Source of the DNA: Ascidiella aspersa
Lineage: Eukaryota
Length of the DNA: 64,000 bases
Direction: 5' to 3'
Assembly: GCA_963924565.1 (NCBI GenBank)
Contig: OZ004613.1
Span: 22,382,001 to 22,446,000 of the forward strand
The first letter of the stretch is position 1, and every line of letters begins with the position of its first letter. Position numbers and translations under genes: made by a program. Below, piece after piece: positions 35,301 to 54,666 of this stretch. Under the pieces are notes generated by a model. That model ran no database searches and was not told the DNA's origin. It saw nothing but the letters and a program-made list of their open reading frames with translations.

Positions 35301-38300
35301 ATCTTTTTCGTTGGTCGGCCCTGTCATAAAATAAACACAACAAATGGAATTGCACAATTATTGAATCCTCATAATCTATATGTTCGGCCTTTTGAAAAAA
35401 CCATCAGCTACAAATAAAAGCTTGTATGACGCTTTCTCTTACCATTCGCACAAGGGTTTTATTTATTTATTTTTTGTTTCACACCATAACGTACTTTAAA
35501 CTAAATCGCCTTTCAGAGCCAGAAACCTACAAAAAGAATACCAACAAGTCCAAACGGCAATATTTCGATTATTATTCACGAATTTTATGTTTTTGTGGAG
35601 TAGTTAGAGCAGAGGTTGTTTAACTGGGGTACGTGGACCTCCTGGGATTACGAGGACTAATTTGACGAGATCCATTAGGGCCGGATTGAAATATTTGTGA
35701 ATAATTCTCTGAAAATTGCTTGCCAACCGTGGTCCACGCGACAAGAAAAATTTGGGGGGGGGGTCTGCAGTAAAAACAAATAAGAACTCCTGTGTTAGAG
35801 CGATATCAATTTGTCATTGAACATACAGAGCAGCGAGCTTCCGACCTCCAAAGCGCTGGGCCTCCTCAAGTACGAGTTTGATGACGCGTCGCTGTCCGAT
35901 TTCGACACCATGCGCGCCACCGTGCGGATGTTCCAAGACATGAACCTGCTCGACAAGTTTCACATAAGCCGTGAGGTGAGGACAGTAAAGCGCAATGGCA
36001 GATACTTTAAGGGGAAAAATGCTTTTTTAAGGATTTGGATATACTAAATTGCTTGGCATACTTGCGTATATCGAAGAGTTATCCCGTCAGACGCATGTGT
36101 GTATGAAACACATTACAGAATAGGTTTTTCTCACCTAAAATACCTGCACGGATAAACTGGACAGCACATGTCTGCCGAAAATACTGATATAAATAAGGAT
36201 AAATTACTAACTACGCATTTTTGCCCCAACATAATCATATTTTGCCTCAACATAAAAGTTATATGGTAGTGTAGACAAAATCAGTTCTTCATCTTATTTG
36301 GACAAATGAGGCATTAAAAAGTATTTTTTATGCTTAACTAATAATACAAAAATGTCAACAACAAGAAATGGCGTTCTTGTCCAAGAACTGAAACTTCAGA
36401 CTTAATGTAAAACAGTGTTTCTCAGCCTTTAATTACTAGCGGAACGCTTAAGAAACAGTAAATAGATTGCGGCACCCCTACAAGATTGTTTCGTCTTCGG
36501 TATTTTACTAGAAAGTCACCAGGTATTTTACTAGAATGTCACAATAAAACACACACATCAACTCTACACAACGTAGGAGGGTATAATTTGATTTATTTCA
36601 CTCTAATCTTTACAAAAAATTGTAAGAGTTGAGCAAAATTTAGTTTCTTAAAGATTCTCAAATATCTTTTGGCACCCTTGAGCATTAGAAATAGCACCCC
36701 AGGGTGCCGCGGCATCCCAGTTAAGAACCATACATGTAAAGCCTTTACCTTTGCCGTTACAGACGATTGGGCGATGGGTGGCGAGTGTGAAGCGCAACTA
36801 CCGCCCGGTCAAGTACCACAACTGGCGACACGCCTTCAACGTGTGCCAGAGCGCCTTCTGCATGCTCAAGCTGGGCGGACTGTTGAACGTCTTCAACGAG
36901 TACGAGCAACTCGCCCTGCTCATTTCCTGCCTGTCGCACGACCTGGATCACCGGGGCACCAACAACGCGTTTCAGGCAAAGTAAGTACATTCAACTGCAA
37001 CGTATCCAACTGCAGCTCGCCAATAGCTATTGCGAGATTATATACACACACATTTTCGTTACAAAGTGTGCGGATACTCTATATTTAGGAAAGAAGTTGA
37101 TTACAGTTGATATTTTGTAAGTAAGTACAACGTGTCGGGCGAAAGGCAGCTCAAGTAGCCTTCACGCGATTTTTTTTAATTTGGGGCAAAATACTTAGAA
37201 TAAAAACAATTGGTTATAAAGAAAAAAAAAATATAGCCATATTTATTTATAATTTCTTGTGATTTTCAAGACTATTTCTTGTGATTTCCCCTCACAGATA
37301 AAAGGTCTTCACTAGGAGCAGTTGCCAAAAAAGGAGGAAAGTCTCTGCGGTGTTAGGTATAGGGGGCCTCCGCCTTCACGAGACCAAATCCATAAAGCAT
37401 TATCGTTTCTTTAATATGGCAGCTATCATTTTTTTTCACTAATTTCGGCGCCAAGTTCAGAGCTAAAAAGACAAAGTGTACAGATGCTTTATTTTGGTAG
37501 TTTATAATTATGAAGTGTTGCACTGAATATGTGATATTGTGAATCACCTTAAACTTTGCAAGGTAAATGTCGACCTTAATTCTTGATCAGTAACACCAGA
37601 ATACGCTAGCTAAGCTAGCAATTCAAGTCGGACATTATTAAAAGATCTTAAAATATATTTATATATGTATATAAATATATATAATATATATTTATATAAA
37701 TTGCGGCAACCAAGGCATCGTCAGTATCCGGATTCGAATATTCGAATTGCCAGCTTTGCTAAGAGTATTCTGCTGTTTATAGAACGTAATATTTTTTCAA
37801 GTGTGTTTACTCCTTTAAGGTTTAATTTCTGGTAACATATATAACCTTCGTATATTTTTTGAATTTGTTAATTGGTGGTGCAATAAAACATATACGTGTT
37901 GATTATTCCTATCTACACAGCACATCGACATAACTTTCAGCATTTTACGTATATAACTGCTCACCATTGGTCAAATATTTTTAAAACCAACAGAACTCGT
38001 ATTTTGTTGTGCTGGAATCAGATACATCGTAACGAATCAATTTATTGCTGTGAGTGGAAAAGTTTTAAAATGAATTCTTTCCTTAAATCAAACGACGTAA
38101 ATCCCATTTCAATACATTTATCATCATCTAGTTTTTCGGAAAAAATGCGCGGCCATCGGCGGACTGAAATCAGTTTGCAGCAAGCACCAACGTTAACAGA
38201 ACGAAACTGCATTAAATGAGTCTAAACATGTTCACACTAATATCACTCCATTTATCCTATTCATCTAGGATCGAGCACCCTCTGGCGCGTTTATACTCCA

Positions 38301-41300
38301 CCTCAACGATGGAATATCACCACTACAACCAGTGCATGATGATTCTACAAAGTGAAGGTAAGAACGTTCTGTCTGAATCAATTTTACATTTGGTATTTTA
38401 CCTTGGTTCAAAGTGTTAAAAAAAACAGTGATTAATTGCGGTTTATTGTTTCGTTTTTAAAAAAATTTAGTTTGCTTTACTTTATTTGATTCAAGATATT
38501 GTTTTTCTTTGCTAAATGCACTATTTTTTGTATTTATACATTCGTTTGATGATATTGCCATGTTAACCAAACGCGAAATAAAGAATTCAATTTAATCTAA
38601 AATGAATTGCCTTTATTTAGGTGGGTATATAATAAATAATAAGGTTTGCAACTCAAATACAAATCAATATACTAAAGGCAAATTACTGAAGTACATATTT
38701 TGTTGATTGAAAATTTTTATTTTCATTTTTCTACCTTATCAGGAGAAGGTTTTATTTTCTAAAAAAATTGCCCGTTTCTTTTATTCACTTTTTAAATGGT
38801 AATTTTTTTTTTTAATTACGTATTGACCTATATAAGTAACCTATTAATTGTCGGTTTTATCGCTCGCCGACAAAATATCCTCATTGAAAAAGGCAATAAG
38901 GTTTCATTCATATTCCAAGCACAGAGCACTTTGCTCGTGCTTAAATTCGCGACAAGGACAAACCCGCTTTGCACCATTCGATGGCACACACGCGCAAGAA
39001 TAAAGCAGCTCGTCCGACTGAAAGATGCACTCCCCTCTATTGATGACGTAACTTGGAGCGTGACACGTCACAGATACGTCACGTTTGCCGCTTTGTCGAG
39101 CTTCGATTAGCTGCTGTTTGGGAAAAATGACCGTCGTGGTTGCGCAATCCACGCCGTTTGCTCGCAACACTTTTGTGGAATTGATTAGCGCGAAAAAAGT
39201 GCGCTCGCACACCATCTTGCGGCTAGCGCACGCGGCGGAACAAGATTCGCCCAGATGCGATAGCTGTACCTGCGCCATTAAAAAAATACGTTACGTTCTA
39301 CTAGCCGTTCTGTCTGGAGATATTATCTTTACAATTACGGTTTTGTTCTCATAAAGCGACAAGAACATAAATTGCATTTAAGTGTTTTATTCTTGACAAA
39401 TTACACTTATATGGCAGTCAGTGATGATGTTATTTAATCATGATCTTAGTTGCAAAAAAGTAAATACGTAAAATTCATCCATTCAATTACATTTTAAATA
39501 CATTTTAAGAAAGACATTGTTGTTTTGATCAAAACTATAAGCTAATTATTTAAAATGCTATCTTAAAATGTGCAGCAAGATAGTAGGCTAACGAAGGTTT
39601 GATTACGTTTTTAGATTGTTTATTGTTACGTCGGCTTATAGACTGACCTTCAATGCTGAAACTGGCGGCCATTTTCTTTTTTTCCGTTTCCAGAAGACCT
39701 GACTCGCCAGCGAAACAGACCGCAAACTTTCGGTGCAAAAATCCTGGTTTTCCAAATACGAGTTCAGTCTCTGTAAAAAAACATGTAAATGTTTTTTTGA
39801 GTTACATGTTGTAATTAGAATTACAGACGCATTCACAAATTCACCTCCAAGAATCCTTCGTGCGTAAACTCATAGGTAACGTAAGGGCGGGGCCTTTTGG
39901 AATTGCGTATTTGCTTCAGGGTTTCGTTCACTTGGGTGAGATTGCCAATGTTCACAGTAAACACGAAAGGCGGGCCTTGAAAAAAGGTAGGTTGTTGATT
40001 GCAGTAAAATATTATTTAGGTAATTCAGAAGACCAGGAAGTCCGTTTATAAAACTGGTCTAAACTAAAGAAGTGTTTTAGTATATATTCCATGCCTTTAT
40101 CTTTTACTGTTTAACGAAATGTTTTACATGATGTTTTCACGTTGTCCTTGGTCAGTAAAATTACAACAGGTGTTACTCCCATACAGGAAAGCTTGCTTAA
40201 ATAATGCATAATATAACAATAATTTCGATCTTTCCGCAACTATTCGATGTTAAAACTTTTATCACAACTTAAACAATTCAAAAGCTTTGTCCAAACCCAT
40301 AATAAACCTATGCATTTACGCAACTCACTGCTCACCGATGCTATTTTCTGCGTACGGATTTTGTGACGTCAGTCGGCGATTGGTCGGTTTATCTTTACCG
40401 ACGAAACGCGGGGGGTTGAAACGGGGATTTAGAAACACGGCCCCCTGGGCCAGGGCTTCTAAAGCGGCTGGTCCTTCCACCGGCAACCCCAGGCCAACGT
40501 ACACGGTCGACCGTCTCAGAAGGTCGAGGAACTCGGTTTGATGAAGACGACTATGATTGATGACGAAATCGGGCATATCTGAGTTATCTTCATCCTAAAG
40601 AGGTTTTGTGAAATTATGTTGTAGTGGGACAATATGTGGCACTGTAGTTTGACCTCAGCCGGACATTTTTCTAAGTGGTTTTGGATGATACCGAGCTGCT
40701 AAAATGAACTTAAATGAGGTTGAAATGTAACTTTAAGTATTCGTGGTGTGGCTTGTAATCCTATAGAAAAAAGAAAAGATATAGGTAAGCTAACGCTTTT
40801 TGATTGTATTTCAACCTTTCTTTTTCATCGCCAAGCCAAAGTGTTGATCATAGTTGGTCGCATCTTTCTGAACATTGTTTTAGAATTAGATGAATATCCA
40901 ACAAACCTTGTCGTCTTCCCGAACCGTGGCATGAACTTCGTCAAAGTTTTCGCTTAAGGTCTGAAGAAATCGCAGTTTGTTTCGCCCTTTGAAGATCCGT
41001 TTTCTTTTGCCATAAATCAATGCTATCTTCCTGGAACACACATGTCGGATTGATTACGGAAAGCGGTGTATTGTGAACTTAATGTCTTATTATGCATGCT
41101 AATTTCATGCTTTAAAGGAAACAAAAAACTTGCACCAATAATACAACGTAAAAGCAGGGCCGCTGACAAAAAGTACCAATAGTATAATACGTTGAGTTTT
41201 GACGGTATACACATAATCACGTTTGGTTTATTTACTTAAATACATTTAAAAACACTTGCCTGGTTGTACGTGTTGAGCCTCTTATGTTATTGTTAATGTG

Positions 41301-44300
41301 CTCGCTTTTTATTTTCTTTTTTTAAAGAGGTATTTAACCTACGAAACAACTAAAATCTTGCTGTTACTGATTTTTTTTGCAAAAATATATAGAAGGGCGT
41401 ATCTTTATGCAAAACCATTGGCAGCAGGTTTCTGCTTGTCGATCACTGTTCCGCTGACGCGTAAATAAACAATAAAGCTCAAAGTTTAAAAATCAGAATA
41501 AAATCAGAAAACAGGAATATATATTTCTCCCATACTGGCAAAGGCAGTTCCTTAATTGGAATGATTGATTTTTTAAAAACTGGTTTTTAAACTTTTGAGT
41601 TTTATTGTTTATTGTTTTTTTGCATAATGAGCGCGTGAGTTGAATTAAAAAAAAAGAAACACAGTTCAAATTTCCAACTGTACAATGAGTTGGGATATAC
41701 TTACTTGGTTGAATTTGGGATGTCCGTCGCCATTGCTTTCTCTACAACGAAACCAAGGAACGAGTTGTCCGGAGAATGCGGAAAGTGAGTGAGGAACTGA
41801 CCAGGATCCAATCCTCTACCTACATGCAAATTCCACATGGTCACTATTACATGTCTTGAAAATAGATTACTGCCTACTCGAAATTATTTGAGGCGTGGTG
41901 TGACCCCGAATATGTTACACTTTATAATGCGTGTTCGACACGTTAATTGAACTTTTTATTTCTGTAAAGGTACAATACTTTTTAAATTAATAACCAGGAA
42001 CACGGAGTCGTCGGTTAAAATCCTTCTCCGGCAGAAAAAAATAAACTCGAGTCCGAGTCCCGAGTAAGGAATACGTCTTTGGCCAATTTAATTCCCAAGT
42101 ATCGCTTTGACTTCCTATACCATTTAGGAACTGAAAAAGGGTGGATATACAGCAATCCGAACAGGTCGTCATATAAATTGTCTACCCGCAATTAATATAT
42201 TTGGACAATATTTAACTATTCGCCATTTTATCATTGCAATTTAGAGTTTGCAGTCTTATCAGTGCAATCAATATACTTACATGCATAAAGCGTCCAATAC
42301 TTTTACGAGCGAATATAGAAGCTCCAAGACAATTGGACAAGGTGTGTACTAATATAAGTTAAGGTACCTCCCCATCTGCGGTTGTTCGATCTTTGCGGGC
42401 TGAACAGCGGGTGATTGAACTCCGGCTCGGTTCCATAAACGTCCAAAATACGAATCACACATCGGTAAAGGTACAACGAACCAAGTTGGTCTTGAATCTT
42501 TGTAAAAAAACATCGTTTGTAAATTGATCATCCCCGCCTAAAATTAGGTGCCTTAAAAGGGTTAAACAAAACTATATGTTTAATTTGACGAGAAATTCGC
42601 ACGAAACAGTTACATTTGTATTTACCTGCTGGAGGCCAATAATATCGGTAAAAACAAAATCGTATCGTCTTGCCGATTGACATACGGACGTTTTGTGCTT
42701 TAAAACTTGTTCTAATCGTTCGGGGGACCAAGAAAGGGTGACGTCATGACCCAGGGCGTGCAGGCTTGAAGCCAAGTCGGCCCACTGAACCAGTTCGCCG
42801 AGTGGCCCACCATGAAAAGCAGCCAGGCCAAAGTTAAGCCCAATCTCTTTTGTAAGGAGGCCCATGTGCAGAAGAACACTGAGTTTGACGCGTCTAGTTG
42901 CTGTCGAGCTGTCGTTGTCGCGCGACACACCTTGTCGTTTGTCGCTTGGCTCGTGACGCTTAATCTTGGCAAGCTGAAGGGCGCTGCTGGTCCACTTCTC
43001 TTCCATTCGTTTCACGCGTTTAGAAATCCACTCACAAACCTAAAGGTAGAAGGTTAAGAAGTTGGGTATAACAGTTAATGTACAAAGTATACATGGTTTA
43101 CCTCTCCACATTCGTCAAGTCTGTTCAGCAAATCTTTAAAATCTCTACCGGAGCCTGCTCGAGGAATAATATCAAGAGCGCGGGACTTCGGGAGAAGAGT
43201 TCCGGCGAACACGAAAGCAGCATCACGCGGTTCAGGGCAACTTCTCTCAACGTACACAACATGTCGGTAGATGTAGCAGTCGATATCTAATGCAGTAGGT
43301 TTCAGCTTGATTTGCAAAAGCGAGAGAAATATTTGTGGCAACAAAGCAGGATTTTATCGCTATTGTACTGACAGGAGTTTATGGGCTACACAGAAATCAC
43401 TTTCAGTTGTGAATGACTGAAGATAATCAATAAACTTGAAGCTGTTGACATTTTAGGTTTATCATAGGCAAGACTTTATCTTTTGAATAATAGATATATT
43501 TAGTATATCATTTTACATAGGCAAGGTTTTAATTTTCTATAAAAGGTTTATTCAGTATATAATTTTACATGGACAAGTCTTTCACTTTAGGATAAAATAT
43601 ATATTCAGTATATCATTTTACACGGGCAAGATTTTACTTTTGTATAAACGATATATTCAGTATATTATTTTAGTTGTTAGGTATTAGTTCTACCCAGTGT
43701 GGTGCTGTCGTTGTGAGCGCTTTTCAGTTGCGAAAGGCAAGGGTCCAGTTTCCAATTTTCCAGCAACCAATCATAACGCTTCACGCATCGTCGATCGCCG
43801 TCGATCCGTAACCGTTGTTTTCCGCAAAAGAGCAATCTACCCCGCTGCGTTATTCGTTCCTAGAAATACGTTTTAACTAAAACTAACAGAATAATGCATA
43901 TATTTAACAAACGTATCAAACCAGCAAGACTGCACTAAATTTGGCGGGGGCTTAAAAGTTTCAAGAATATATTACACCAGTCCGTGATTGCGTAGTACGG
44001 GATAGTTTAAATTATTGGTTCCTAAATGCTTCCTTGAAACAATGACGGAACCCTTTAATGCTTAAAACTGCGAAAATTAAAATTCACGCGACTACAATTC
44101 TTCTAACCTTTAGTTCAGTACTAATACTCTATACTTACTGTACACAAGCTACCAAAAGAAGTATTTTGAAAAAAAAAATATTTTTTTAAGAAAAATATTT
44201 CCGCGACTAATATAGTTTTCAACCTATAAGATAAGAGACGTTGTGCGGCCCCTTTAAACAATCTTACGGACCCCAGTTTGACCTCTGGTTTAAATAATAA

Positions 44301-47300
44301 TCAAGCACTGTAAGTTGCCATTTTTATTTAGACAAGTGGCTTTTTAATCCAGTGCGATTTGTTCTGCTCTGCATTAATTCTATAGAGATAACTCGAATTC
44401 TAACAGTCCACCTAAATCTTACCACTGCGACGGCGTCGGTCTGTCTGTGCTCCTTAATCACCTTCTTATGCAGTCTCAGTAGCGCCGCCATCCAGAAGAG
44501 TGCGGTCAGAAGCACAGCAACCCTTACACTTGCAAATGAAACCCGCATTGCACTTTTCCATGGCTATAACAAGCCTTATGACCCCCTACAACACAGAGAG
44601 GGTAACACTGTTAAAAATTGTGCTAACAAATTGACAACCACAGTCTTACTGTTTGCATTTGTACTGTTTGCAAATGGATATATCATCTCGCATGGTGCAA
44701 TGTTTTGCAGATCGCGAGATTCTTCTGTTTAAACTTACAACTTTGTCATTTGATGACCAAGCAACAACAAAAAACAGTACAAATACACAGTAATTTTAAC
44801 AAATGACATTTGCAATAAAATCCCCTAAAACGATGCTTGCACGTGACTAAGGGAAAACGAATATTTGGTCTGTGTCAATACAAACAATACAAACAATACC
44901 AAGCAACAAAAAAATTATCAAAATAATGAGACTATTTTAGCGTGGCGAGAAAATAGCTGACATAGCCTACATAGGATAAAACGAATCTGATATGTGGCAG
45001 GGCGCAGCAGCTAACAGCCCTTAAACTAAAAGGTATACCATGATCCCTATCCATGTTTGGTTGAGAACCACTCTATTATTTAATGGCATACTGTTTTATT
45101 TGTAAACTGATCAAACACCTTTAACAGTAAAAGTGTGGTTTGTCCAGCAACTGAATGAAAAATGTGACCTTTATGATAGATACAACAAACTAAGGTAAAG
45201 CTAGCGAAACTGGGTTAACGCTTTCTAAACTTTTCTTGGTTAACTTGGTAGTACTTCACTGCGGCCTTAACATAAACGCACACAAAATTTTGTGTAATGC
45301 ATCGCATCACAAGTTACACAATGTTCTGAACGGGGCTACCACTGCTCACCATACAATGCAGCCTGAGCCTGAAACTCAAAATCACAACGCCTCGTATGAT
45401 GACAAGCGAACAGCATTCTGCGTCGCAAACGCCTTCCCAATACGTCTGCATCATTTACAAGAAACAAGAATTGCCCGAGGCACATTTGCGCTCAGGTCTG
45501 TTGATTTGTCCTCACATTGCCGAGATGTTGACTAGTCGCCTGAAAGCAGTCAGCGTCCTTGGACTGAATCAAGGCACGTCGGAATTGCGGTTTAGATGGT
45601 AGATAAGGCATAAAGTTCCAACCTGCTTTTCGGCAGGTGCAGTTTGACTTAAAATGTATGTGTCTTGGGCGTTGCCAGATATCGACGGTAGACCAAAAAT
45701 CCTTTGTTAAACGTGTAGGCTAAGTTGTGGTTTAATGCCAATTGGACATGAATGAAAAACAGGGGTAAAAATAAAAAGTAATAAACTGTACACCGGTTGG
45801 TTTCTTTCAAACATCGCACCAAACCGTTAACCAAAGCCGAAATCAAAGGCACTGTTTTAATATCATGCCACATTTTCGTCCGAGGGGTTATGTTGCTAAC
45901 ATAATTTGGGTTAGGGTGCGTCAAGCATTATTATTATATTTGTTCTCCCTATTTATTTGTTGCGTGCAATTTTAATTTTGACGACTCGTTTCGTTACTGT
46001 TCAAAAAGTGGTATGATTCGAAACCAGCCCTCAAACAACTTCCTGGCTTGGTTTAAAATTGTAAAAAAAATTGTTTTTTAAGGGTGTGAGATCTTGTCCC
46101 ACCTGAGCTCGAGCGATTACGCGCGAGTTATCAAGCTCATTCAGCACGCCATCATCAGCACCGACCTGGCGGTCTACTTCAAGAACAGGAACAACTTTTT
46201 CGACGTTGTCAAGTCGGCCAAACCGGATTGGCAAACCAACGACCAGCACCGCGATCTTTTGAGGTAGGAGGGCACGACAAGCTCCTATTTTGATCTCGTT
46301 AAAGCGACTTGGTCTTATGTTGCAACTTATGTCGCGCGCATTATATAAATATATATACATATATTTGACACCAGGGTAAAATGCGTAAGTAATGCGGACC
46401 TCTGTATGCGATTTTAGGCTGTTTACAAAAACCTTACGGTCAGCGTACATTGTCATTTTGCAACAGCCACTGTTTAAGCACTTCTTTCTAATGTTTTTTG
46501 GGCAAATTAGAAATTCTCGCCCCGGTTGAGCAAATCTGTTACACAACGAAAGATTGATTCGAAAAAAAACACGATTAAGTGTATTTTTAAAACCACAAAC
46601 ATATGTTTAAAAAACAATCTTTACCTTATATTATTACATTCTGGGGTGTCCTAATACCACCTTCCCCTGGTCGGAAGGTAGTTTTTTCAAACTATTGTTT
46701 GGTTTTTAAAAGTTTTAATGAACAAAATATATTTTTTTACATTAGTGATTAGTTATTTTCCGACGTTGGCTCACGTATGTTGCGTTTCTGCTAAAAAAAA
46801 ACCTTCTTCATATTAAAAAGAAATAAAATCCACCAGAGTTAAAACATTATTGGAACACGATGTTGAACTAAGTATGTCTGGCATTTTAGATGGACAAATA
46901 GAATAGCTTGTTTAAACGCTTTTACACATATTACAAATGTTGTCATACACTTTGATTTATTCATTTCTAAGAATAAAATTAAAATATGTCATTTTCTGTC
47001 AACTTTCGACACAAAACTTCGCCAAATGGAAATTTCACCACCTGCTTTGCATACTGGCCTATCTACTAACCGCTAAAGTCATTTGCATATACCAATAACA
47101 ATACATGGGTGCACTATGCACGGATTTGTAATGTAGCTTGATAATGAAATGCAAAGCCATGAAGGTCGAGTAGATTGACATAATCTTGATTGAGACATTT
47201 CCATACGAGTTTTGTCATCTTCAGTTAATGTGACTAAGAAGCAAAACAAGAATCATTTATAAAGGTGGGACGAAATTGTTATCAGTCTGCGTTTCTATAG

Positions 47301-50300
47301 TTGGATCATTATTTCTATTTTTTCTTTTATAAGTGATGCTTGTGTTGCTTCTCAGTCACATTAGCTAAATATAATACAAGTTCATATCGAAACGTCTTAA
47401 TCAAGATGATGTCGATCTATTCGACCTTTTTGGCTTTTCAATTCATTACCAATAGCCATACATCTGTCTGAAAATCTAAACACTGTGTTTTGCGGCACCA
47501 GGAGCGTTGTTATAACCGGGTGTGATATCGCCGGCATCACAAGGCCTTGGAACGTTCAGAAAAAGGTAGCTCTCTCTATCTCTCTCACCTGTCTGTTTTG
47601 TGTTTCATTCAAGCAGAGTGATGCTGTATATTGTGCCGCGACTTTGCACTTTAGAGCGCCCTATAATTTTTTCCTCGTGCCCGCACGCACGCATTGTCAC
47701 ACGCATTCGTGTTTTTGCACCCTCTACCCCCTCGTCGAAGCACACGGCACGCGTCGGCATGTGTATCGTCTCTATATAGTTTGCTAAAATACGAACCAGG
47801 ACCCTGAGAAGTCTATGAGAATGCTAGCTCTGAAATAATACCAGAAAATTCAGGATTGTTCTTTTAGTTGAAAACATAAATGCGATTTGGTTTATGAAAA
47901 TTTAGTAACTGTAGATAGTAAATTTTTCAACTTTGTTTAATACGGTTATATACATTTTTTTTGAACCGATTTCTAAATTTGTTTAACCCAGTATGCTTTC
48001 GTATTCTTTATACCACCGCCAAATTTGTGGATAGTTTTTCGCTTGAAATGTAATTTTGTTTGGGTATAAACTTAAAGTGAGGTCTTATCATGTCGCGTTC
48101 TCATAACGATAGTGTTCGTATGCGTTTTCTCCTATTTTTGGATGAGTTTAGGCGTTCTTTGCCAAAGGAGCGAACACACGTAGGAAACAAATCGCCGGTC
48201 ATCCCATCGCGTCATGCGTGTTGCGATTCAGTTTTCACCACTGTTCAACTACCTCGCTTCATCCTTATGCTTATTATCATTGCGATATAATAAGCTGTAA
48301 GCGGTTGGCTTTGAAAAAATCTCATACGCCGCATACTTGCGTTACCTGCTACATACGCATAGCAGCAACATGGCAGTAGCCATAAAAGTAATGCCTATAA
48401 TTTCTCATCATCATCATCGTAAAGTTACCAATTGTTTTCGCTCGTAAATCTGCGTTTGACGTGCAATCATATTGCCAGATTAAATATCGAATTAGACTTT
48501 TTTTGTATTCCATTGTAAAAGTCCTTTCGAAACTGAACTGTGGCCCTTATTGGAAAAAGGTAAGAAAACGAACCGTCGTCACATATATGCCTAAAGGAGT
48601 TGCTATACAGTTTTTTCATGAGTTTGACCACTCTTCCACAATAAATTACGGTGTATATTGTTAATAACTAACCTACCAGAAGTAAAGTTGATAATTTTTT
48701 AATCTGTGGTGGCTGTAACTTGGCTGGGTGAGCTTTTGCAATACCGTCAGGCCCTAAAACGGATTTGTGGCATTATTAGGCACCAATTAGACTCAATATC
48801 GACCCATTTTGATATTTTTGTCAAAATTCTACTTACCAACCTGTCATAATTTTCAATGTGCAAAATTGTACACTTTTAACGCTTGAAAATAGCAAAAGGC
48901 ACAGTAACTGAGATTGTTTTAATGTATTGCAGTATATTGGTCACATTTGTTTTAATACTCGGCAAACATGGAAAACTTATTTTGTTTTTTTCATTTGATA
49001 TTTTTTTGACAATAAATAAATATAAATTAATTTTACCTTACCTGCTTTGAGACAAAAATCAAACTGTTTTACACTTTTACTGCAACATCAGGCATTTAAA
49101 TTAGGTACAGCCAAAAGTGCCAGCCACGCTTATAAAGGCTATTTTATTTGTCAGACTGAAACATAAAATTGCTGTATTTTCAAATACATGATTTAAAAAA
49201 AAAATGAAATCCAATATATTTTAATTAAGGTAACAATAGCTCTATGTGAGATAAAACTGACTTATTAATCTGTTTCGTAAACAGTTATGCGATATATAAG
49301 CAACTTTTTTTGGTTGTAATATAAGTAAAATATATATATTTTGGCCAAACCATACTTGCGTCGGTTTCGCATGGTTAAACAGCTTCGTTATTATAAGATA
49401 CTTGTCCAACGCAGGGGCATGGTTATGACGGCCACTGATGTGTCAGCCATTACAAAGCCGTGGCTCATCGAACTAAAGGTACCTATTAAACTCGTTTTGT
49501 TATTGATCTATACCGCCGCGAAAATAGAATACGGTCATCGCTCGTGAATTCGTCCACAATTCTATTAAAAATGGTTACTAGAGATGTCCAAAGTTACGAG
49601 AGATGTCCAATCCCTCCTGTTTTGAATCGGAAACCACCACCTGGTGTTTTTTTTTGCGAAAGGTCAACCGTCCGATCGGATACCAAATGACGTCGATACT
49701 GTACTAAAATAGGCAAACTTCAACTTGCAAAGGTTTAAAATTGGTTTGGTGTGAGAAATTTCAATTATTTTAATAGAAATCATACGACTGATACCCCATT
49801 ACTATCACAATATGACATCAGACTTTAAACATCTCTGGTTTTTACCAACTCTACCACCCTTAACGTTTCACAGCGATCACCGTATTCTAATAACTGCGAG
49901 AATATAACATTACTTATTTTGCCGTTTTCTGTTGTTAGTATATAGTCTCGATCGGCAGTAATTTCCGTTCGTAGGCAAAGATTTTTATTTTTTGACCAAC
50001 CTATCGATTCGTATAGAATGGAATATTCCATTGTGCTAACGACAAATCTTTTCTAGATTACTTTGTGAAAGCGCAATATATTGTGAAACTACAAACAAAT
50101 TTTAAAACGCGTATATTAGAAATCCAACTGATAAAATATTTAAGTTTAAATGTAACCATGGAGAGTGGCGGACAGTAGGGTATTTGCCAAAAGGTAATTT
50201 GATTAATCATAATACACTTTAGAGTAAGCACGGTTGGTTACGAGTCATGCTTATACAACAAGAAAAAAAAGAATACGAATTGCCATTTTGCAACGACGTG

Positions 50301-52732
50301 GCACAATATTTTGGACATTGTTCACTGTTAGTTTAGTACAACATACCACCTACACCAGTGGTTCCCAACCTTAGCACCCCCCAGAAACAATAAATAGATT
50401 ATTCCAACCCTATCAAAATTTTCGTAATTCACTACAATGTCACAAAAATCGGAACTGGAACAACACACATCAATTCTACAAAACATGTAGGGAAGTATAA
50501 CTTAGCTTATGGTACTCTAATCTCACACAGAGAGTTGTAAGAGGACTACCAATTGAAAAAATCATGTTCTGAAATATTACTAAATATCTATCGGCACCCC
50601 TAAGGATAAGAAATGGAACCCCGATTGGGAACCACTGGCCCACACCTTCACCAAATATTTTCTTGCTACTTTTCGAACAACCGATCGTGGAGTGTTTTTT
50701 TACTGTACTGATATTTGCAGTCCAGCGCTGATCTCACTGTCCGTCACTCTTTAGGGGGTAGAGGGTTGTGATCATGGCAGTTAGTAGTATGCAGCACATT
50801 TTCTTGTTGATACCTGCATGAAACCGCTCGCAATCATAATACATACCGCTATAGCTTCGATGCGTGTGCGCGCGTGTGTGTGTGTGTGTGCCTGTGCATG
50901 CGCCTGTATATGTGCATTGTGCGTTTGATGCATGCAGGGTACTGCAAGTAGAGTAGAATAAAGTATTAACAAGTGCATTTACCGAACTAAAAAATACAAT
51001 CACGCTGGGTAATTTGCTCACAAGAAAACCTGAGAATAAATCCAACCAGGACAAGCCGATTTGGTGTATTAATAAGAGACGAAACTATTTAGTCAGTAAA
51101 TTTATAAACTCGTATAGCTTTCTAATTAGCTGACGTAAATACGAACATTAACCAAAGGGTATACGGTTAAGCTTTGAGTTAAACTATTGGATAATCTGAA
51201 GCCATTAGAATGCTTCGTTGCGTTTGGTATTAAAACGGGGTGCGTTCAGCACGCTTAAGCAAGAGCCCGATCGCGAATGTGCCGCTTCGCCAGGTCGCCG
51301 AACAGGTTGCTGAGGAGTTTTTCGAGCAAGGCGACATCGAGAAGAATCGACTGCGTCAGGAGCCGATCGACATGATGAACAGAAAGCTGAAACACAAGCT
51401 GCCCAACATGCAAGTCGGCTTCATCGACAGCATCTGCCTGCCGTTGTACAAGGTGGGAACAGGGACGGACCATGTTTTTTAGAGTACCTATAAGCACTTA
51501 GGACTCTGGTGCCCTATATGTGTCATTCAAAATATATTCACGATAAACCACACAATATTATTCATTGAAAATATACAGAGGTTTAAGATGATACTTGAGA
51601 ACGAAAAATAAGCACAAATTTATTTCAATCGGTTCAATATTGAGGTTTGAGTTGTCTGACCAACTCGAATTATTTCATTAAACACTGAGGCAACATTGGC
51701 AATTGAGCTATCGAAAATTCTGTAGTGCCCCCCATCTCTCTGTGCCCTAAACTCGTGCTTATTTTTCTTAATGGTTAAATCCACCCTGGCTGAGGTTAAT
51801 AATTCGACACGGCCGTATTCCAACGCTATTTGTCTAAAAAAATCCGTTTCGGCAGGAGAATAGTTTTGAGTTTCTTGGAAGTCTGATGCAGTATGTCGCA
51901 TGTTTTCTAGTCACCAACCAATAGCCTTCAGAAACAGTTTTCGTTATTAGCACATATCCCAAAATTTAGTGCAATTCCAAAAGTGATGTAACTACCATCT
52001 ATGTGCCGCCATAAATAAGGACGAATGAATAAAACAACGATTTTAATACGATACATATTGTGGTAAATTCAAACAAAGAAGCATATATTGGTAACTTTCC
52101 TTCCGTTGATCAACATTCTATCCTATTGTACAACTGCAGGCCGTATAGTCTTATAAAACAGTGGTCGGCAATCGCCGGTCCACGGACCGGTACCGGTCCG
52201 CGAGGAGTTCATTACCGGTCCGTAGCAGGGTTCCAGATGACATTTTGATCAAAACCCGATTTTTTTATTGTAAAATCGAACTCCTCGTACGTAGAATATA
52301 TCGAAAACGGGAAATATATAGCGTTTTTTTTATGTTCAAGCGTGCTCATATAAAGTGCAATAGAATTAAATCATGCAAACAATGTTTATAAACAATGTTG
52401 ATGTTCAGACAGAAAATTTTCGAAAAAACGGATGCATTTTAATTTGGACATTGAAAAAAGTTGTTATAAATTTCCTTTACAGAACATTTGTTTTTTTCAA
52501 GGCCGGTCCGCGACAAAATTTCAGTTTTAAACCGGTCCGCAGTGCAAAAAAGGTTGCCGACCCCTGTTATAAAACACTCTCACAAGGTTAAAACCAAAGA
52601 ATAGCTAAAAACACGTATTTTTCGTTACAGGCTCTTGTAGCGACTTCTACTGGCCTGCAGCCCATGCTAGCCGGTTGCCTGGACAATCGCAAAAACTGGG
52701 TGAAACTGGCCGAATCCGGAACCAGTCTGTAA
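11317..52732 (+). CDS. PDE5/PDE11: GAF-domain cyclic nucleotide phosphodiesterase, PDE5/PDE11 group (whole gene, 20 coding exons per isoform, ~881 aa, two mutually exclusive versions of exon 18)
   Basis: Hand-spliced join: 11317-11353, 12384-12536, 13119-13525, 20353-20454, 22368-22487, 22668-22757, 24698-24850, 26696-26837, 27989-28128, 31314-31361, 33335-33410, 33908-34074, 34676-34726, 35829-35975, 36763-36980, 38269-38357, 46083-46263, [47502-47565 or 49415-49478], 51294-51452, 52631-52732. All introns are GT-AG and phase-consistent, 2646 nt with no internal stop. Two GAF NK..F..DE motifs; catalytic motifs [21 protein letters not shown]....T(R/K)PW, EFFEQGD, MQVGFID. Confidence 0.93.
12384..12536 (+). 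CDS. PDE exon 2 ([27 protein letters not shown]...)
   Basis: tttctgtag acceptor, gtatgt donor; resembles PDE5A [27 protein letters not shown]. Confidence 0.88.
13119..13525 (+). CDS. PDE exon 3 (TPIRKIS kinase-site region, start of GAF-A)
   Basis: Branch-like ctaac, cgcttag acceptor, GC-rich codons; TPIRKIS...LKPMV resembles PDE5A TPTRKIS...LRPIV; gtaggc donor. Confidence 0.9.
20353..20454 (+). CDS. PDE exon 4, GAF-A ([16 protein letters not shown]...[10 protein letters not shown])
   Basis: ttttcag / gtaaat; ADR.SLFLV GAF motif. Confidence 0.93.
20525..20923. mobile_element. hAT-type MITE
   Basis: Perfect 15-bp TIR CAGTGCTTTCCAACC; perfect 8-bp TSD ACCTAAAT. Confidence 0.92.
22368..22487 (+). 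CDS. PDE exon 5, GAF-A ([21 protein letters not shown])
   Basis: tttcag / gtaagt; GAF GIAG..A.TG..LNI.DAY motif. Confidence 0.93.
22668..22757 (+). CDS. PDE exon 6, GAF-A ([26 protein letters not shown])
   Basis: tttgcag / gtaaga; RFN..ID..TGYKT..ILCMPI motif. Confidence 0.93.
24698..24850 (+). CDS. PDE exon 7, GAF-A NKFDE region
   Basis: tttcag / gtatat; [20 protein letters not shown]. Confidence 0.93.
26696..26837 (+). CDS. PDE exon 8 ([13 protein letters not shown]..., start of GAF-B)
   Basis: ttgcag / gtaagt; VLLDLA..LFEEQ. Confidence 0.92.
27650..27935. mobile_element. hAT-type MITE
   Basis: TIRs CAGTAGTTCCCAAACT / AGTTTGGGAATCACTG; flanks acctatatag / acctatag. Confidence 0.8.
27989..28128 (+). 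CDS. PDE exon 9, GAF-B
   Basis: tcgcag / gtaagc; phase 1 to 0; ...[14 protein letters not shown]. Confidence 0.85.
28384..28832. mobile_element. hAT-type MITE
   Basis: Perfect 16-bp TIR CAGTGGTTCCCAAACT; perfect TSD CCCTAAGG. Confidence 0.93.
31314..31361 (+). CDS. PDE exon 10, GAF-B ([16 protein letters not shown])
   Basis: ttcttgcag / gtgagt; N..DA..D.RF GAF motif. Confidence 0.85.
32150..32935 (-). repeat. Dispersed repeat, inverted homolog of 60730-61530
   Basis: Reverse-complement blocks shared, e.g. catcactaact.ccctaa, taaccccaaacag, taatactatggt, tagatttttctg. Confidence 0.75.
32397..32602. mobile_element. hAT-type MITE nested in an older repeat
   Basis: CAGGTGGTTCTTAA / TTAAGAACCACTG; TSD TTTTAACC / TTCTAACC. 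Confidence 0.8.
33335..33410 (+). CDS. PDE exon 11, GAF-B (SLLCVPIRD)
   Basis: tttgcag / gtagct. Confidence 0.9.
33574..33617 (-). ncRNA. Minimal type I hammerhead ribozyme-like motif
   Basis: UUUACA-CUGAUGA-U-GGCA(loop)UGCU-GAAAC-GUC-UGUAAA: perfect 6-bp stem I, 4-bp stem II, palindromic ACGU stem III. Confidence 0.6.
33733..33776 (+). ncRNA. Minimal type I hammerhead ribozyme-like motif (stem I mismatch)
   Basis: UUUAGA-CUGAUGA-U-GGCA...UGCU-GAAACGUC-UGUAAA. Confidence 0.5.
33908..34074 (+). CDS. PDE exon 12, GAF-B NKFDE region
   Basis: ttttag / gtaagt; GVIQLVNK...[20 protein letters not shown]. Confidence 0.93.
34676..34726 (+). CDS. PDE exon 13 (VLSYHA...)
   Basis: ttacag / gtaagt; LE-VLSYHA motif. 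Confidence 0.9.
35175..35345 (+). mobile_element. Possible degenerate tRNA-derived SINE
   Basis: A-box-like AGCTCAGTCGTT (35185) and B-box-like GAATTCAAATC (35228), A-rich tail; no cloverleaf. Confidence 0.3.
35610..35792. mobile_element. Degenerate hAT-type MITE
   Basis: CAG...CTG termini; TSD AGTTAGAG / TGTTAGAG. Confidence 0.65.
35829..35975 (+). CDS. PDE exon 14, start of catalytic domain
   Basis: atacag / gtgagg; ...[15 protein letters not shown]. Confidence 0.9.
36413..36733. mobile_element. hAT-type MITE (related to 50356-50637 and a fragment at ~12740-12890)
   Basis: CAGTGTTTCTCA start; TSD ATGTAAAA / ATGTAAAG; shared internal blocks such as ttgtaagag and aaatatct..ggcaccc. Confidence 0.72.
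36763..36980 (+). CDS. PDE exon 15, metal-binding core
   Basis: ttacag / gtaagt; [14 protein letters not shown] and [10 protein letters not shown] class I PDE signature. Confidence 0.96.
38269..38357 (+). CDS. PDE exon 16 ([22 protein letters not shown])
   Basis: atctag / gtaaga; HPLA.LY...ME.HH motif. Confidence 0.93.
38904..39269 (-). CDS. MGAT5: MGAT5 terminal exon 11 (Cys-rich C-terminal domain)
   Basis: GESCSAAC...RVCPCREF...ALC, stop; minus-strand AATAAA near 38780. Confidence 0.92.
   Translation of the reverse strand, partial: VQLSHLGESCSAACASRKMVCERTFFALINSTKVLRANGVDCATTTVIFPKQQLIEARQSGKRDVSVTCHAPSYVINRGECIFQSDELLYSCACVPSNGAKRVCPCREFKHEQSALCLEYE
38904..44548 (-). CDS. MGAT5: Alpha-1,6-mannosylglycoprotein 6-beta-N-acetylglucosaminyltransferase (GnT-V, GT18), 11 coding exons, ~712 aa, nested in PDE intron 16
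   Basis: Join on the minus strand: 44548-44423, 43859-43694, 43286-43102, 43039-42626, 42497-42368, 41819-41705, 41030-40907, 40594-40336, 39975-39845, 39770-39648, 39269-38904; 2139 nt, GT-AG, phase-consistent. N-terminal type II signal anchor; motifs [76 protein letters not shown] versus B paralog not resolved. Confidence 0.93.
39648..39770 (-). CDS. MGAT5: MGAT5 exon 10
   Basis: [12 protein letters not shown]...WPPVSAL. Confidence 0.9.
39845..39975 (-). CDS. MGAT5: MGAT5 exon 9
   Basis: GPPFVFTV...[14 protein letters not shown]. Confidence 0.9.
40336..40594 (-). CDS. MGAT5: MGAT5 exon 8
   Basis: [30 protein letters not shown]. Confidence 0.93.
40907..41030 (-). CDS. MGAT5: MGAT5 exon 7
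   Basis: ALIYGK...EVHATV. Confidence 0.9.
41705..41819 (-). CDS. MGAT5: MGAT5 exon 6
   Basis: [20 protein letters not shown]. Confidence 0.93.
42368..42497 (-). CDS. MGAT5: MGAT5 exon 5
   Basis: [17 protein letters not shown]. Confidence 0.92.
42626..43039 (-). CDS. MGAT5: MGAT5 exon 4
   Basis: [13 protein letters not shown]...FTDIIGL. Confidence 0.93.
43102..43286 (-). CDS. MGAT5: MGAT5 exon 3
   Basis: [15 protein letters not shown]; phase 1 to 0. Confidence 0.85.
43464..43672. repeat. Tandem repeat, ~52-53 bp x4, in an MGAT5 intron
   Basis: Units like ataggcaag...tattcagtatatcattttac. Confidence 0.85.
43694..43859 (-). CDS. MGAT5: MGAT5 exon 2
   Basis: tttctag acceptor; [17 protein letters not shown]. 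Confidence 0.85.
44423..44548 (-). CDS. MGAT5: MGAT5 exon 1 (signal anchor)
   Basis: [24 protein letters not shown]; gtaag donor, phase 0. Confidence 0.75.
46083..46263 (+). CDS. PDE exon 17 ([11 protein letters not shown]...HRDLLR)
   Basis: ttttaag / gtagga; missed by the ORF track on + but carries the TDLA motif; ends phase 2. Confidence 0.93.
47106..47452. mobile_element. Diverged foldback element with hammerhead-like cores
   Basis: 47138-47262 is an imperfect reverse complement of 47327-47452; internally deleted relative at 58541-58695. Confidence 0.8.
47502..47565 (+). CDS. PDE exon 18A, mutually exclusive ([21 protein letters not shown])
   Basis: caccag / gtagct; 64 nt, phase 2 to 0; invariant metal-ligand Asp and T.PW motif. 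Confidence 0.88.
47719..47732 (+). promoter_or_regulatory. Candidate intronic selector element downstream of exon 18A
   Basis: ACCCTCTACCCCCT is the exact reverse complement of 50753-50766. Confidence 0.6.
49415..49478 (+). CDS. PDE exon 18B, mutually exclusive ([21 protein letters not shown])
   Basis: acgcag / gtacct; 64 nt, phase 2 to 0; gapless homolog of 18A. Confidence 0.9.
50356..50637. mobile_element. hAT-type MITE
   Basis: TIR CAGTGGTTCCCAA / TTGGGAACCACTG; TSD ACCTACAC / GCCCACAC. Confidence 0.85.
50751..50768 (+). promoter_or_regulatory. Candidate intronic docking site upstream of exon 19
   Basis: TTAGGGGGTAGAGGGTTG pairs with 47719-47732 (14 bp perfect) and imperfectly with 49846-49863. 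Confidence 0.55.
51294..51452 (+). CDS. PDE exon 19 (EFFEQGD...[15 protein letters not shown])
   Basis: cgccag / gtggga; invariant Gln and Phe of the purine pocket. Confidence 0.95.
52159..52566. mobile_element. hAT-type MITE
   Basis: TIR CAGTGGTCGGCAA / TTGCCGACCCCTG; perfect TSD TTATAAAA; subterminal ccggtcc repeats. Confidence 0.9.
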
Positions 52733-54666
52733 CATCTATTAACTTTAAATAACATCAAATCGAAAGCGCCCATTAGTCTTCAAAATTTTTTGTGTAACGT
52801 TCCTCTTCTTGATGCATTTCCGCGTGTTTCGTATCGTTCGCCTTTCACCGTTATATCTTGTTCGCTTTTTTTACCCCACCTGTTTTCAGCGGTATACCAC
52901 CGAGGAACGGGTGGTGGAAAGGTCATCGGTCAAAAGCGTAATAGAAATTGCCGCCCGTAATTGCATAGACGGTGTGTCGTGTGTTACAGTTTGTTGCGAA
53001 AAAAGAAAGAAGGGGTTCGAGGCCTCTGGCATCTACCAGAGGTTGGCATCAAAGTAACAATAGGAGCAACTAGAAAGGGAAGCATAGACGGATCGAAGCC
53101 ATTTGCTCAAAAAAATAAAATGCAAATAGAAAATACCAGTTTATCTAGTAGATATACGGTACAAATTAATTAGAAAAAAATGGTCTTAAGTTAAGTGTGA
53201 ATTTGGAAGAAAAGTTGTGTGAGGTTATTGTAATGTTAACAATCCTACTAATCCGCAAAAGTAGAGTTCTAATTTGCAATTATCAAGCATAAAATTTACT
53301 TGATTTTTGAAATGAATAGATCATTAGAATAAACAGCCTGCGAAAAAGTGACAAATTTATTTTTAAGATCTTGGTATCCCCGGAACTGCTTACATATCTA
53401 TAGCGATCTTTTCAATCGTCCAGCTTTAGTTATTTCAAAAATTTCACCTTCCTTTAAATTTCCTTTATTTTGGTAAATATGATATTGGAAAGAGTAATTT
53501 CAGTAGTGTATATATTCTTACACGAGTAATGCCATGCTTGTTTGGTTTAGAACAGGGTTTGGCAACCTACGGCCCGCCACATATTTGACAAGAGGTCATT
53601 CTTCATAATTTTTGGTTGTTACAACTACCTAAAAGCAAGCTCCTGCATCGAGTGTAACAAGTAGTTAGAGCCTTTTCAATCACAAATACCCTAATTTTAT
53701 CTCTGAAAATCAGTCGTTGCGGTTGTTATAATAAGACGCGTAAAGTCTACACAGTTAACATGTAATTATACTTGCAGACTGCGAATCCTCATTACTCAGC
53801 ATCAAACGTTTGTAGTTTTGCTTCATGTGTTAAATTGGGGTTTAACGCATTGGTGTCCGAAACAGCGTTTTGATAAAGAAATTACTGCTGTACCGTCGTA
53901 CCGGTAAATATATTCACTTGTTTCTGGGCCATGTCCCAACAAAATAATTTTTTGCCTATGTAAAATGTCGTTCTTGGGCTGAATATACAGTTCCTTTAGT
54001 TTAAACGGACAAAAACGTAGTAAACAAGGACAGAAGTTAAATTTTGCATTTACATAGTGAATGTCGACCGAAAATATAGTCTGCGGGGCATGGCCCGATG
54101 CTCTCTGGATCCGATCATGGGCTCGAAAACACCATTGCAAATACAAACAAGAAGCTTATATTGTTTACTGAAGTTGAACAGCGACTTCCAACGTAACCTA
54201 TTTGCTTTGTGGTAGCTTACGTAACCACAACCTGAAAACCCATACGCTGATGAAATGTGCATAATTATGATTAAATTTTCAACAACGACAGAAAAGTGTT
54301 TACTTTGGAGTCGCCGATAGATTACGCTACCTAGTTGCTGTAAGAACTGTATTGACATAACTTACGGGTCATGTTTCAAAGGTCACTTCTCCCCAGGTAG
54401 CCAATGCTGTGCTGTCGTTGCCTATTTGAACGCAAATGTAAAATGAACTTTCAGAGCATACTGCTTTTGGCGAATAGCTTTAAAATTAGAGCGATTTTAG
54501 TTGGAATTTGCCCTACAGTTAAGTTTACCCTGTAATATAAACACGACAAGACGTTTAATTCCGAAACAACAGCAGCGTGAAGCTGTGCGTTTGCAAAGGT
54601 AAACGTGGTTGAACTGGAAACGGCTCGCCTTACACAGCCACGCAAAGATTGTTTCGCAGTCAAACC
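52522..54666 (+). repeat. Segmental duplication, copy 1
   Basis: Aligns with 61860-64000 (offset 9338 at its start) with scattered substitutions and small indels. Confidence 0.95.
52631..52732 (+). CDS. PDE terminal exon 20 ([33 protein letters not shown])
   Basis: ttacag acceptor; PML.GC..NR..W motif; TAA; no CaaX box. Confidence 0.92.
   Translation, partial: ALVATSTGLQPMLAGCLDNRKNWVKLAESGTSL

What the first reader, a model, noticed from the sequence alone, without database searches (positions are those of the whole stretch)
47502..49478. Mutually exclusive exon pair that swaps the active-site wall of the phosphodiesterase
Seen: two homologous 64-nt exons, both AG/GT-bounded, phase 2 to 0 and stop-free: 18[22 protein letters not shown] and 18[22 protein letters not shown]. 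Skipping both or including both shifts the frame, so exactly one must be used. They differ at most codons yet both keep T, D, IT, PW and K, implying selection on both. Known: this segment carries the invariant metal-ligand Asp (PDE5A D764) and pocket residues L765, A767, I768 and Q775; Q775 helps orient the invariant Q817 linked to cGMP selectivity. Those positions are I/G/I/Q in 18A and V/A/I/E in 18B. Inference: one gene encodes two catalytic pockets, potentially switching cGMP/cAMP preference, kinetics or inhibitor sensitivity by splicing. PDE isoform diversity I know of is mostly N- or C-terminal, so this may be undescribed.
Basis: partly seen in the sequence, partly recalled or inferred. 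Interest (0 to 1): 0.92.

Follow-up and report, generated by a model that had tools for sequence, protein, structure and literature searches.

The report
Swappable active-site exon in ascidian phosphodiesterase
A sea-squirt phosphodiesterase gene holds two alternative copies of one 64-base exon, only one of which can be spliced in, so one gene can make two enzymes with different substrate-pocket linings. The pair is real, conserved across ascidians and already in public gene annotations, but I found no study of it.

Summary
Exons 47502-47565 (18A) and 49415-49478 (18B) are both 64 nt, AG/GT-bounded, in the same phase and stop-free. They lie between constitutive exons 46083-46263 and 51294-51452 of a GAF-GAF-PDE gene of the PDE5/6/11 clade, in an ascidian genome close to Phallusia. 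Using either exon alone keeps the frame. Using both or neither gives early stops.

The main evidence comes from relatives. Ciona intestinalis (two annotation releases), C. savignyi, Clavelina lepadiformis and Styela clava each have annotated isoform pairs of equal length that differ only in this 21-residue segment. Phallusia mammillata has a B-type protein. The A types group together across species, and so do the B types. Each type is as conserved as the flanking exons (about 0.78 identity), while A and B are only 0.41 identical to each other. About 110 isoform and member sequences from ten other animal groups, and a paralogue in this genome, show a single version.

The segment carries the metal-binding Asp (PDE5 Asp764) and pocket positions 765-768 and 775. 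A switch of cGMP/cAMP preference is plausible but untested. It is weakened because the Styela B exon keeps Gln at position 775.

RNA reads for this species were too thin to show junctions. I found no paper describing the pair. It is a new member of a known kind, of moderate interest.

The parts
12380..52699 (+). Span of the GAF-GAF-PDEase gene (PDE5/6/11 clade) as traced exon by exon with the Ciona savignyi and Phallusia proteins
   Evidence: tblastn of P0006, P0016 and P0017 on the window. Exon-wise matches of P0157 in the own genome. Pfam GAF, GAF and PDEase_I on the orthologues.
46083..46263 (+). Constitutive exon upstream of the pair ('exon 17'). It ends with two bases of an Arg codon.
   Evidence: It has an AG acceptor and a GT donor, and is 69% identical to C. 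savignyi.
47502..47565 (+). Alternative exon 18A (64 nt, A type: Ile760, Cys763, Ala766, Gly767, Gln775 in PDE5 numbering)
   Evidence: It is 76-90% identical to the A-type segment of four other ascidians. The A clade has 95/97 support.
47566..49414 (+). Intron of 1849 nt between the two alternative exons
   Evidence: It is too long for steric exclusion of the two splice sites.
49415..49478 (+). Alternative exon 18B (64 nt, B type: Met760, Thr763, Ser766, Ala767, Glu775)
   Evidence: It is 21/21 identical to the Phallusia mammillata protein P0157 and 67-90% identical to the B type of the other ascidians. The B clade has 87/83 support.
51294..51452 (+). Constitutive exon downstream of the pair ('exon 19'). 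It carries the invariant Gln and Phe of the nucleotide clamp (PDE5 Gln817, Phe820).
   Evidence: Best PDB match is PDE5A residues 776-833, E 1.5e-17.

Best explanation
This is a pair of mutually exclusive homologous exons. It arose by tandem duplication of one 64-nt exon of a PDE5/11-like phosphodiesterase gene, before the ascidians sampled here diverged, and both copies have been kept by selection. Each mRNA must carry exactly one copy. Because 64 is not a multiple of three, transcripts with both or neither copy are frameshifted, meet early stop codons and are expected to be lost to nonsense-mediated decay (inferred). The swapped 21 residues form the helix that carries the metal-ligand Asp (PDE5 Asp764), the pocket wall (positions 765-768) and the residue that holds the invariant substrate-clamp Gln in place (position 775). 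So the gene produces two enzymes that share GAF regulatory domains and most of the catalytic domain but have different pocket linings. Shown: the exon anatomy, the frame logic, orthology and conservation of both types, and annotated isoform pairs in relatives. Inferred: that both are spliced in this species, that some regulator chooses between them by tissue or stage, and that they differ in substrate preference, kinetics or inhibitor sensitivity.
For: Anatomy and frame. Both peptides match the same PDE5/6 stretch. Equal-length isoform pairs differing only here occur in C. intestinalis (two annotation releases), C. savignyi, Clavelina lepadiformis and Styela clava, with differences confined to a 19-21-residue span. 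The Phallusia mammillata protein has a B segment identical to the window's. Mean cross-species identity is 0.79 for A and 0.775 for B, against 0.68 and 0.81 for the flanking exons, while A versus B is 0.41. A and B form separate clades. Both C. intestinalis isoforms fit Pfam PDEase_I equally well (281.3 and 279.4 bits). Roles of Asp764, Leu765 and Gln775/Gln817 in PDE5: PMC10367598.
Against: There is no direct RNA evidence in this genome. The one RNA run laid gave depth of about 2.7 on exon 17, about 1.6 on exon 19, zero on both alternative exons and no junctions, and nearby intron bins had similar depth. The isoforms in the relatives are computed models, and I could not inspect the transcript evidence behind them. 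A 21-column tree is weak, and B is not separated from the outgroups with strong support. The Glu at position 775 is not universal in the B type, because Styela has Gln there.
Confidence: 0.85

Rival explanations
1. Only one of the two exons is used in this species. The other is an unused or rarely used duplicate, and the paired isoforms in relatives are annotation projections rather than real transcripts.
For: No read of the RNA run lies on either exon. The RefSeq and Ensembl isoforms are predictions whose supporting evidence I could not see.
Against: Both exons keep AG/GT bounds and an open frame. Each is 76-100% identical to its counterpart in other ascidians, although introns between those species are not expected to remain alignable. 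An unused copy would not stay as conserved as the constitutive flanks. Pairs appear in annotations made by different pipelines and releases.
Confidence: 0.06
2. Both exons are used, but the two enzymes are equivalent in substrate choice. The pair is kept for another reason, such as tuning of rate, stability, metal site or inhibitor binding, or splicing-coupled control of expression level through the frameshifted forms.
For: The Styela B exon keeps Gln at position 775. The only differences fixed in all species are at 760, 763 and 766, which are not the classical selectivity determinants. Both isoforms fit the family profile equally well.
Against: Five of six B exons have Glu in place of the Gln that is implicated with Gln817 in substrate specificity. 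The beetle PDE11-named cluster also has Glu at this place. From memory, insect PDE11 is a dual-specificity enzyme and the dual-specificity vertebrate families lack Gln there.
Confidence: 0.4
3. The pair is an assembly or haplotype duplication artefact.
For: A 9.3-kb near-identical tandem duplication lies further downstream in the same window.
Against: The two exons share only 61% of their bases, and the sequence between them is unique. DNA contigs of two other runs span each exon with its own flanks (table 8). The same pair is annotated in four other species.
Confidence: 0.01

Closest known systems
Homologous mutually exclusive exon pairs made by tandem exon duplication (for example pyruvate kinase PKM exons 9/10, FGFR2 IIIb/IIIc, and sodium- and calcium-channel exon pairs; recalled from memory). 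Arthropod muscle myosin heavy chain is a further case (PMC2257972, listed but not read).
   Same: Two adjacent exons of equal length and phase with recognisable homology, of which exactly one is used. Both are conserved over long times. They swap a functional surface of an otherwise constant protein. As in PKM, the swapped part lines a ligand pocket of an enzyme.
   Different: Here the swapped part lies inside the catalytic pocket of a cyclic-nucleotide phosphodiesterase and includes a metal ligand. I found no report of such a pair in any PDE. Among the taxa sampled it is confined to ascidians.
Known isoform diversity of PDE5A, PDE11A, PDE4 and other PDEs (alternative first exons and N-terminal regulatory regions)
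   Same: One gene gives several enzymes.
   Different: Those variants change targeting and regulation and leave the catalytic domain untouched (general knowledge; PMC2929239 covers PDE4, abstract only). Here the regulatory part is constant and the pocket changes.
Paralogous vertebrate families PDE5, PDE6 and PDE11, which differ at the residue that supports the clamp Gln (PDE5 Gln775)
   Same: The same positions vary between enzymes of different nucleotide preference. RefSeq's automatic naming calls the C. intestinalis A isoform 'PDE11-like' and the B isoform 'cGMP-specific PDE-like'.
   Different: In vertebrates the variation is spread over whole duplicated genes. Here it is packed into one duplicated exon of one gene. 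The same genome also has a separate PDE5/6/11-clade paralogue with a single canonical exon.

Membership tests
Mutually exclusive homologous exon pair (tandem exon duplication) | Neighbouring exons of the same length and reading phase with splice sites on both sides | tested here: met
   Both are 64 nt, with AG before and GT after, entering in phase 2 and leaving in phase 0.
Mutually exclusive homologous exon pair (tandem exon duplication) | Sequence homology between the two exons | tested here: met
   They share 39/64 bases and 8/21 residues. Each matches the same PDE5/6 stretch on its own.
Mutually exclusive homologous exon pair (tandem exon duplication) | Mature transcripts carry exactly one of the two | tested here: inconclusive
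   For this genome the RNA reads were too few. In four relatives, annotated isoform pairs carry one or the other and differ nowhere else, but these are computed models.
Mutually exclusive homologous exon pair (tandem exon duplication) | A mechanism that forbids both or neither | tested here: met
   Frame incompatibility: including both gives a stop seven codons into B, and skipping both gives stops in exon 19. Decay of those forms is inferred.
Mutually exclusive homologous exon pair (tandem exon duplication) | Both copies conserved in related species | tested here: met
   Mean identity is 0.79 for A and 0.775 for B across six ascidian sources, and the two types form separate clades.
Class I cyclic-nucleotide phosphodiesterase, GAF-containing PDE5/6/11 clade | Two GAF domains followed by a PDEase_I catalytic domain | tested here: met
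   Pfam on the Phallusia and Ciona orthologues. The window's exons match them along their whole length. The window's own spliced model was not searched as one piece.
Class I cyclic-nucleotide phosphodiesterase, GAF-containing PDE5/6/11 clade | Metal-binding His/Asp residues and the invariant clamp Gln | tested here: met
   The Asp aligned to PDE5 Asp764 is present in both alternative exons. The His-Asp motif exon lies at 36760-36981. The Gln and Phe aligned to PDE5 817 and 820 lie in exon 19.
Class I cyclic-nucleotide phosphodiesterase, GAF-containing PDE5/6/11 clade | Closer to PDE5/6/11 than to PDE2 or PDE10 | tested here: met
   The Phallusia orthologue scores 737 bits to full-length PDE5A, 425 to PDE6C, 324 to PDE2A and 235 to PDE10A. 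Assignment to PDE5 versus PDE11 was not resolved, because no PDE11 chain appears among the 60 matches shown.
Exon choice by competing intronic RNA pairings (docking site and selector, Dscam type) | Conserved complementary intronic elements that pair in mutually exclusive ways | tested here: inconclusive
   Two complementarities link the intron after 18A with the intron after 18B (21 nt at 86% and 14 nt at 100%). No orthologous intron DNA could be fetched to test conservation.

The most novel reading that the evidence does not exclude
Ascidians use splicing to switch the nucleotide selectivity of a single PDE5/11-like enzyme. The A exon (Gln at the clamp-support position) would give a cGMP-selective enzyme. 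The B exon (Glu there in five of six sources, with Thr next to the metal-binding Asp) would give a dual or cAMP-leaning one. If so, this is a natural, conserved test of the glutamine-switch model, and it is the first PDE I know of whose catalytic pocket is rewired by alternative splicing.
Probability: 0.3. Interest if true: 0.75.

Novelty: new member of a known kind. Interest (0 to 1): 0.5.

Why it matters
PDE isoforms are normally thought to differ in regulation and location, not in the catalytic pocket. This pair keeps everything else constant and changes 13 of 21 residues around the metal-binding Asp and the residue that orients the substrate-clamp Gln. It has been kept in both forms across all three traditional ascidian orders. 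That offers a ready-made comparison for asking which pocket residues set cGMP/cAMP preference and inhibitor selectivity in the PDE5/6/11 clade. It is also an example of exon duplication doing what whole-gene duplication did in vertebrates. The limits are that the isoforms are already in public annotations, the organisms are not pharmacological models, and no functional difference has yet been shown.

Tried and rejected
RNA evidence in this species. One RNA run (X5) and three contig runs were laid on 46050-51500. About 6% of X5 was read, with a few reads on exons 17 and 19, similar depth in nearby intron bins, none on 18A or 18B, and no junctions. This says nothing either way.

So there was no intron DNA of relatives, no dN/dS and no test of intronic pairings.

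It was redone from files by reference.

The window's spliced model was never sent to a search tool as a joined sequence. Exons were searched singly by reference, and database proteins of relatives stood in for the whole protein. The only joining was a local frame check in a script.

Search for the same pair outside tunicates. About 110 isoform and member sequences of amphioxus, an acorn worm, echinoderms, molluscs, spiders, beetles and Daphnia show one version per species. The 161 flank groups among all proteins fetched by then gave pairs only in ascidians. The own-genome paralogue on C4 has one copy.

Literature. Five full-text searches found no paper on mutually exclusive exons in a PDE catalytic domain or on this Ciona gene's splicing.

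Rejected: assembly artefact, because the copies share only 61% of their bases. Rejected: steric exclusion, because the intron between them is 1849 nt.

Structure prediction was not run. The tools return no coordinates, so it could not have tested side-chain contacts.

Full report
WHAT IS IN THE SEQUENCE.
The window carries, on the + strand from about 12.4 kb to 52.7 kb, a many-exon gene. Its pieces match GAF-GAF-PDE proteins along their whole length. Exon 17 is 46083-46263 and ends with two bases of an Arg codon. Exon 18A is 47502-47565 and exon 18B is 49415-49478. Each is 64 nt, has AG before and GT after, begins with the G that completes that Arg codon, and then has 21 whole codons. Exon 19 is 51294-51452 and starts in phase 0.

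The two exons share 39 of 64 bases and 8 of 21 residues. A motif scan of both strands finds this exon type only at these two places in the window.

In a local frame check (a script, not a search), 17-18A-19 and 17-18B-19 read through. The form 17-18A-18B-19 stops seven codons into 18B, and 17-19 gives stops inside exon 19.

WHAT THE GENE IS.
Exon 19 alone matches PDE5A at E 1.5e-17. The nearest full-length proteins are ascidian:
- Ciona savignyi H2YVD4
- Ciona intestinalis XP_078492494
- Clavelina lepadiformis, Phallusia mammillata and Styela clava proteins

The Phallusia protein matches the window exon by exon at 59-96% identity, and its B-type segment is identical to exon 18B. So the genome is an ascidian near Phallusia.

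The orthologues have two GAF domains and a PDEase_I domain. They are closest to full-length PDE5A among solved structures: 737 bits, against 425 for PDE6C, 324 for PDE2A and 235 for PDE10A. No PDE11 chain appears among the matches shown, so I file the gene under the PDE5/6/11 clade without choosing within it.

The same genome (308.6 Mb; the window is C7:22382001-22446000) has two other GAF-PDE loci:
- A PDE10-like gene on C8.
- A second PDE5/6/11-clade gene on C4. It has a single, canonical copy of this exon between its neighbouring exons.

EVIDENCE THAT THE PAIR IS A REAL MUTUALLY EXCLUSIVE PAIR.
The 90%-identity clusters of the ascidian proteins hold isoform pairs of equal length that differ only inside this segment:
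- C. intestinalis XP_078492494 versus XP_078492495: 14 differences, residues 777-797.
- The older C. intestinalis pair XP_026692985 versus XP_018669817: 14 differences.
- C. savignyi H2YVD4 versus H2YVD3.
- Clavelina X1 versus X2: 11 differences.
- Styela X1 versus X2: 9 differences.

In each pair one member is of the window's A type and the other of the B type.

Across the six sources, mean identity is 0.79 for A and 0.775 for B, compared with 0.68 and 0.81 for the flanking constitutive exons. Any A against any B gives 0.41, with a range of 0.33-0.57. A maximum-likelihood tree of the 21 columns puts all A exons in one clade (95/97) and all B exons in another (87/83). With so few columns this is only indicative.

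The species belong to all three traditional ascidian orders. The duplication is therefore older than their split, and both copies have been held by purifying selection since. This argument is by protein conservation. dN/dS could not be computed because orthologous DNA could not be fetched.

HOW FAR THE PAIR REACHES.
In ten clusters from other animals, about 110 isoform and member sequences show one version of the segment per species. They include 15 amphioxus sequences (from several Branchiostoma species), 15 Ptychodera, 12 sea cucumber and 14 Daphnia. Among all proteins fetched by then, the only sets with identical flanks and different segments are the five ascidian pairs. On this sampling the pair is an ascidian feature of one gene. 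Thaliaceans and appendicularians were not available. An unnamed 865-residue protein from a JGI contig (P0160) groups with the A type.

WHAT I COULD NOT SHOW.
There is no direct transcript evidence in this species. The run search found DNA-like holders and one RNA run of the same species label. Laid on 46050-51500, that run gave mean depth of about 2.7 over exon 17 and 1.6 over exon 19, with the first mate on the minus strand. Nearby intron bins had similar depth. There was nothing over 18A or 18B and no junction. That is uninformative, not negative. The isoforms in relatives are computed models, and I could not see the evidence under them. From memory, the Phallusia entry derives from a transcript submission, but I did not verify this.

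WHAT THE SWAP DOES TO THE PROTEIN.
On the 875-residue PDE5A chain 9lss_A, exon residues 2-19 align to 758-775. Both exons keep:
- Thr761
- the metal-ligand Asp764
- Ile768 and Thr769
- Pro771 and Trp772

The two types differ in every species at three positions:
- 760: Ile in A, Met in B
- 763: Cys in A, Thr in B
- 766: Ala in A, Ser in B

They differ in most species at two more:
- 767: Gly in A except Styela, Ala in B
- 775: Gln in all A exons; Glu in B except Styela, which has Gln

In PDE5, Asp764 is one of the residues that assist hydrolysis, Leu765 contacts cGMP, and Gln775 with Gln817 is implicated in substrate specificity (PMC10367598, citing the glutamine-switch paper of Zhang et al. 2004). 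The clamp Gln and Phe lie in constitutive exon 19. So the two isoforms share the clamp and differ in what holds it.

A carboxylate in place of the amide at 775 could reverse the hydrogen-bond pattern that fixes the clamp Gln. That would relax or change nucleotide preference. This is inference. It fits the Glu at this place in the beetle cluster that RefSeq names PDE11. From memory, it also fits the dual specificity of insect PDE11 and the absence of Gln there in the dual-specificity vertebrate families. The Styela B exon speaks against a simple rule. Compared with the consensus of other animals, B is nearer the ancestral form (15 of 21, by my own unscripted count against the sequences) and A is more derived (11 of 21). 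However, A keeps the ancestral Cys763 and Gln775, which B has changed.

HOW EXCLUSIVITY IS ENFORCED.
The frame rule is sufficient and is shown. Removal of the wrong forms by nonsense-mediated decay is inferred. The intron between the exons is 1849 nt, so steric hindrance is excluded.

Two intronic complementarities would loop out 18B if they paired:
- 47628-47648 with 50289-50309
- 47719-47732 with 50753-50766

Another note of this scan (s1-801680) raises this idea. Without orthologous introns I could not test it.

COMPARISON WITH WHAT IS KNOWN, AND NOVELTY.
Homologous mutually exclusive exon pairs are a well-known class. The nearest analogue in spirit is pyruvate kinase M, where the alternative exon lines a ligand pocket of an enzyme (from memory). 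PDE isoform diversity as usually described is N-terminal and regulatory.

Five full-text searches found no paper on mutually exclusive exons in a PDE catalytic domain or on the splicing of this ascidian gene. Papers on PDE6 evolution mention a Ciona or tunicate PDE only as a tree outgroup or sister (PMC4906994; PMC4948711). Both isoforms are nonetheless already in RefSeq, Ensembl and UniProt.

I rate it a new member of a known kind. It is real, old, conserved and placed at an interesting spot, but it is found by routine annotation and its function is unknown.

SCORES.
Confidence that this is a genuine, selected mutually exclusive pair giving two pocket variants is 0.85. Probability that the two forms differ materially in cGMP/cAMP selectivity is about 0.3. 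Interest is 0.5.

Noticed in passing
window 47138-47452: Nested inverted repeat (arms of 71 nt and 54 nt, 81-83% complementary) ending 50 nt upstream of the exon 18A acceptor. DNA contig depth over 46960-47505 is hundreds to thousands of times the neighbouring depth in three runs, so this is a very high-copy MITE-like element. Another high-copy stretch lies at about 50418-50599.
   Followed up: partly
window 47628-47648 with 50289-50309, and 47719-47732 with 50753-50766: Two long-range complementarities (21 nt at 86%, 14 nt at 100%) join the intron just after 18A to the intron after 18B. Pairing would loop out 18B and bring the 18A donor near exon 19. Conservation could not be tested.
   Followed up: partly
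window 52517-54359 and 61855-63691: Tandem duplication with about 9.34 kb spacing at 96-99% identity. Each copy holds a candidate last coding exon of the PDE gene (52628-52699 and 61966-62037, both matching the C-terminus of the C. savignyi protein). It is either a recent segmental duplication or an assembly duplication.
   Followed up: partly
window 55518-55826 and 59473-59796, + strand: Two long open frames between the duplicated blocks look, from memory, like pieces of a sulfotransferase-type gene. They were not searched.
   Followed up: no
G000:C4:26808000-26829000 (L007 = C4:26824000-26829000): A second PDE5/6/11-clade gene in the same genome, closest to PDE6 and PDE5/6 chains for its exon-19 equivalent. 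It has one canonical copy of the exon (L007 2851-2913). Its 3' boundary is the same as in the window gene, but there is no intron at the 5' boundary. It may be the tunicate 'PDE6-like' gene mentioned in PMC4906994 and PMC4948711.
   Followed up: partly
proteins P0153 and P0268 (Ciona intestinalis): RefSeq's automatic naming calls the A isoform 'dual cAMP and cGMP phosphodiesterase 11-like' and the B isoform 'cGMP-specific phosphodiesterase-like', although they differ in only 14 residues. The swap is enough to change the name-giving best match.
   Followed up: no
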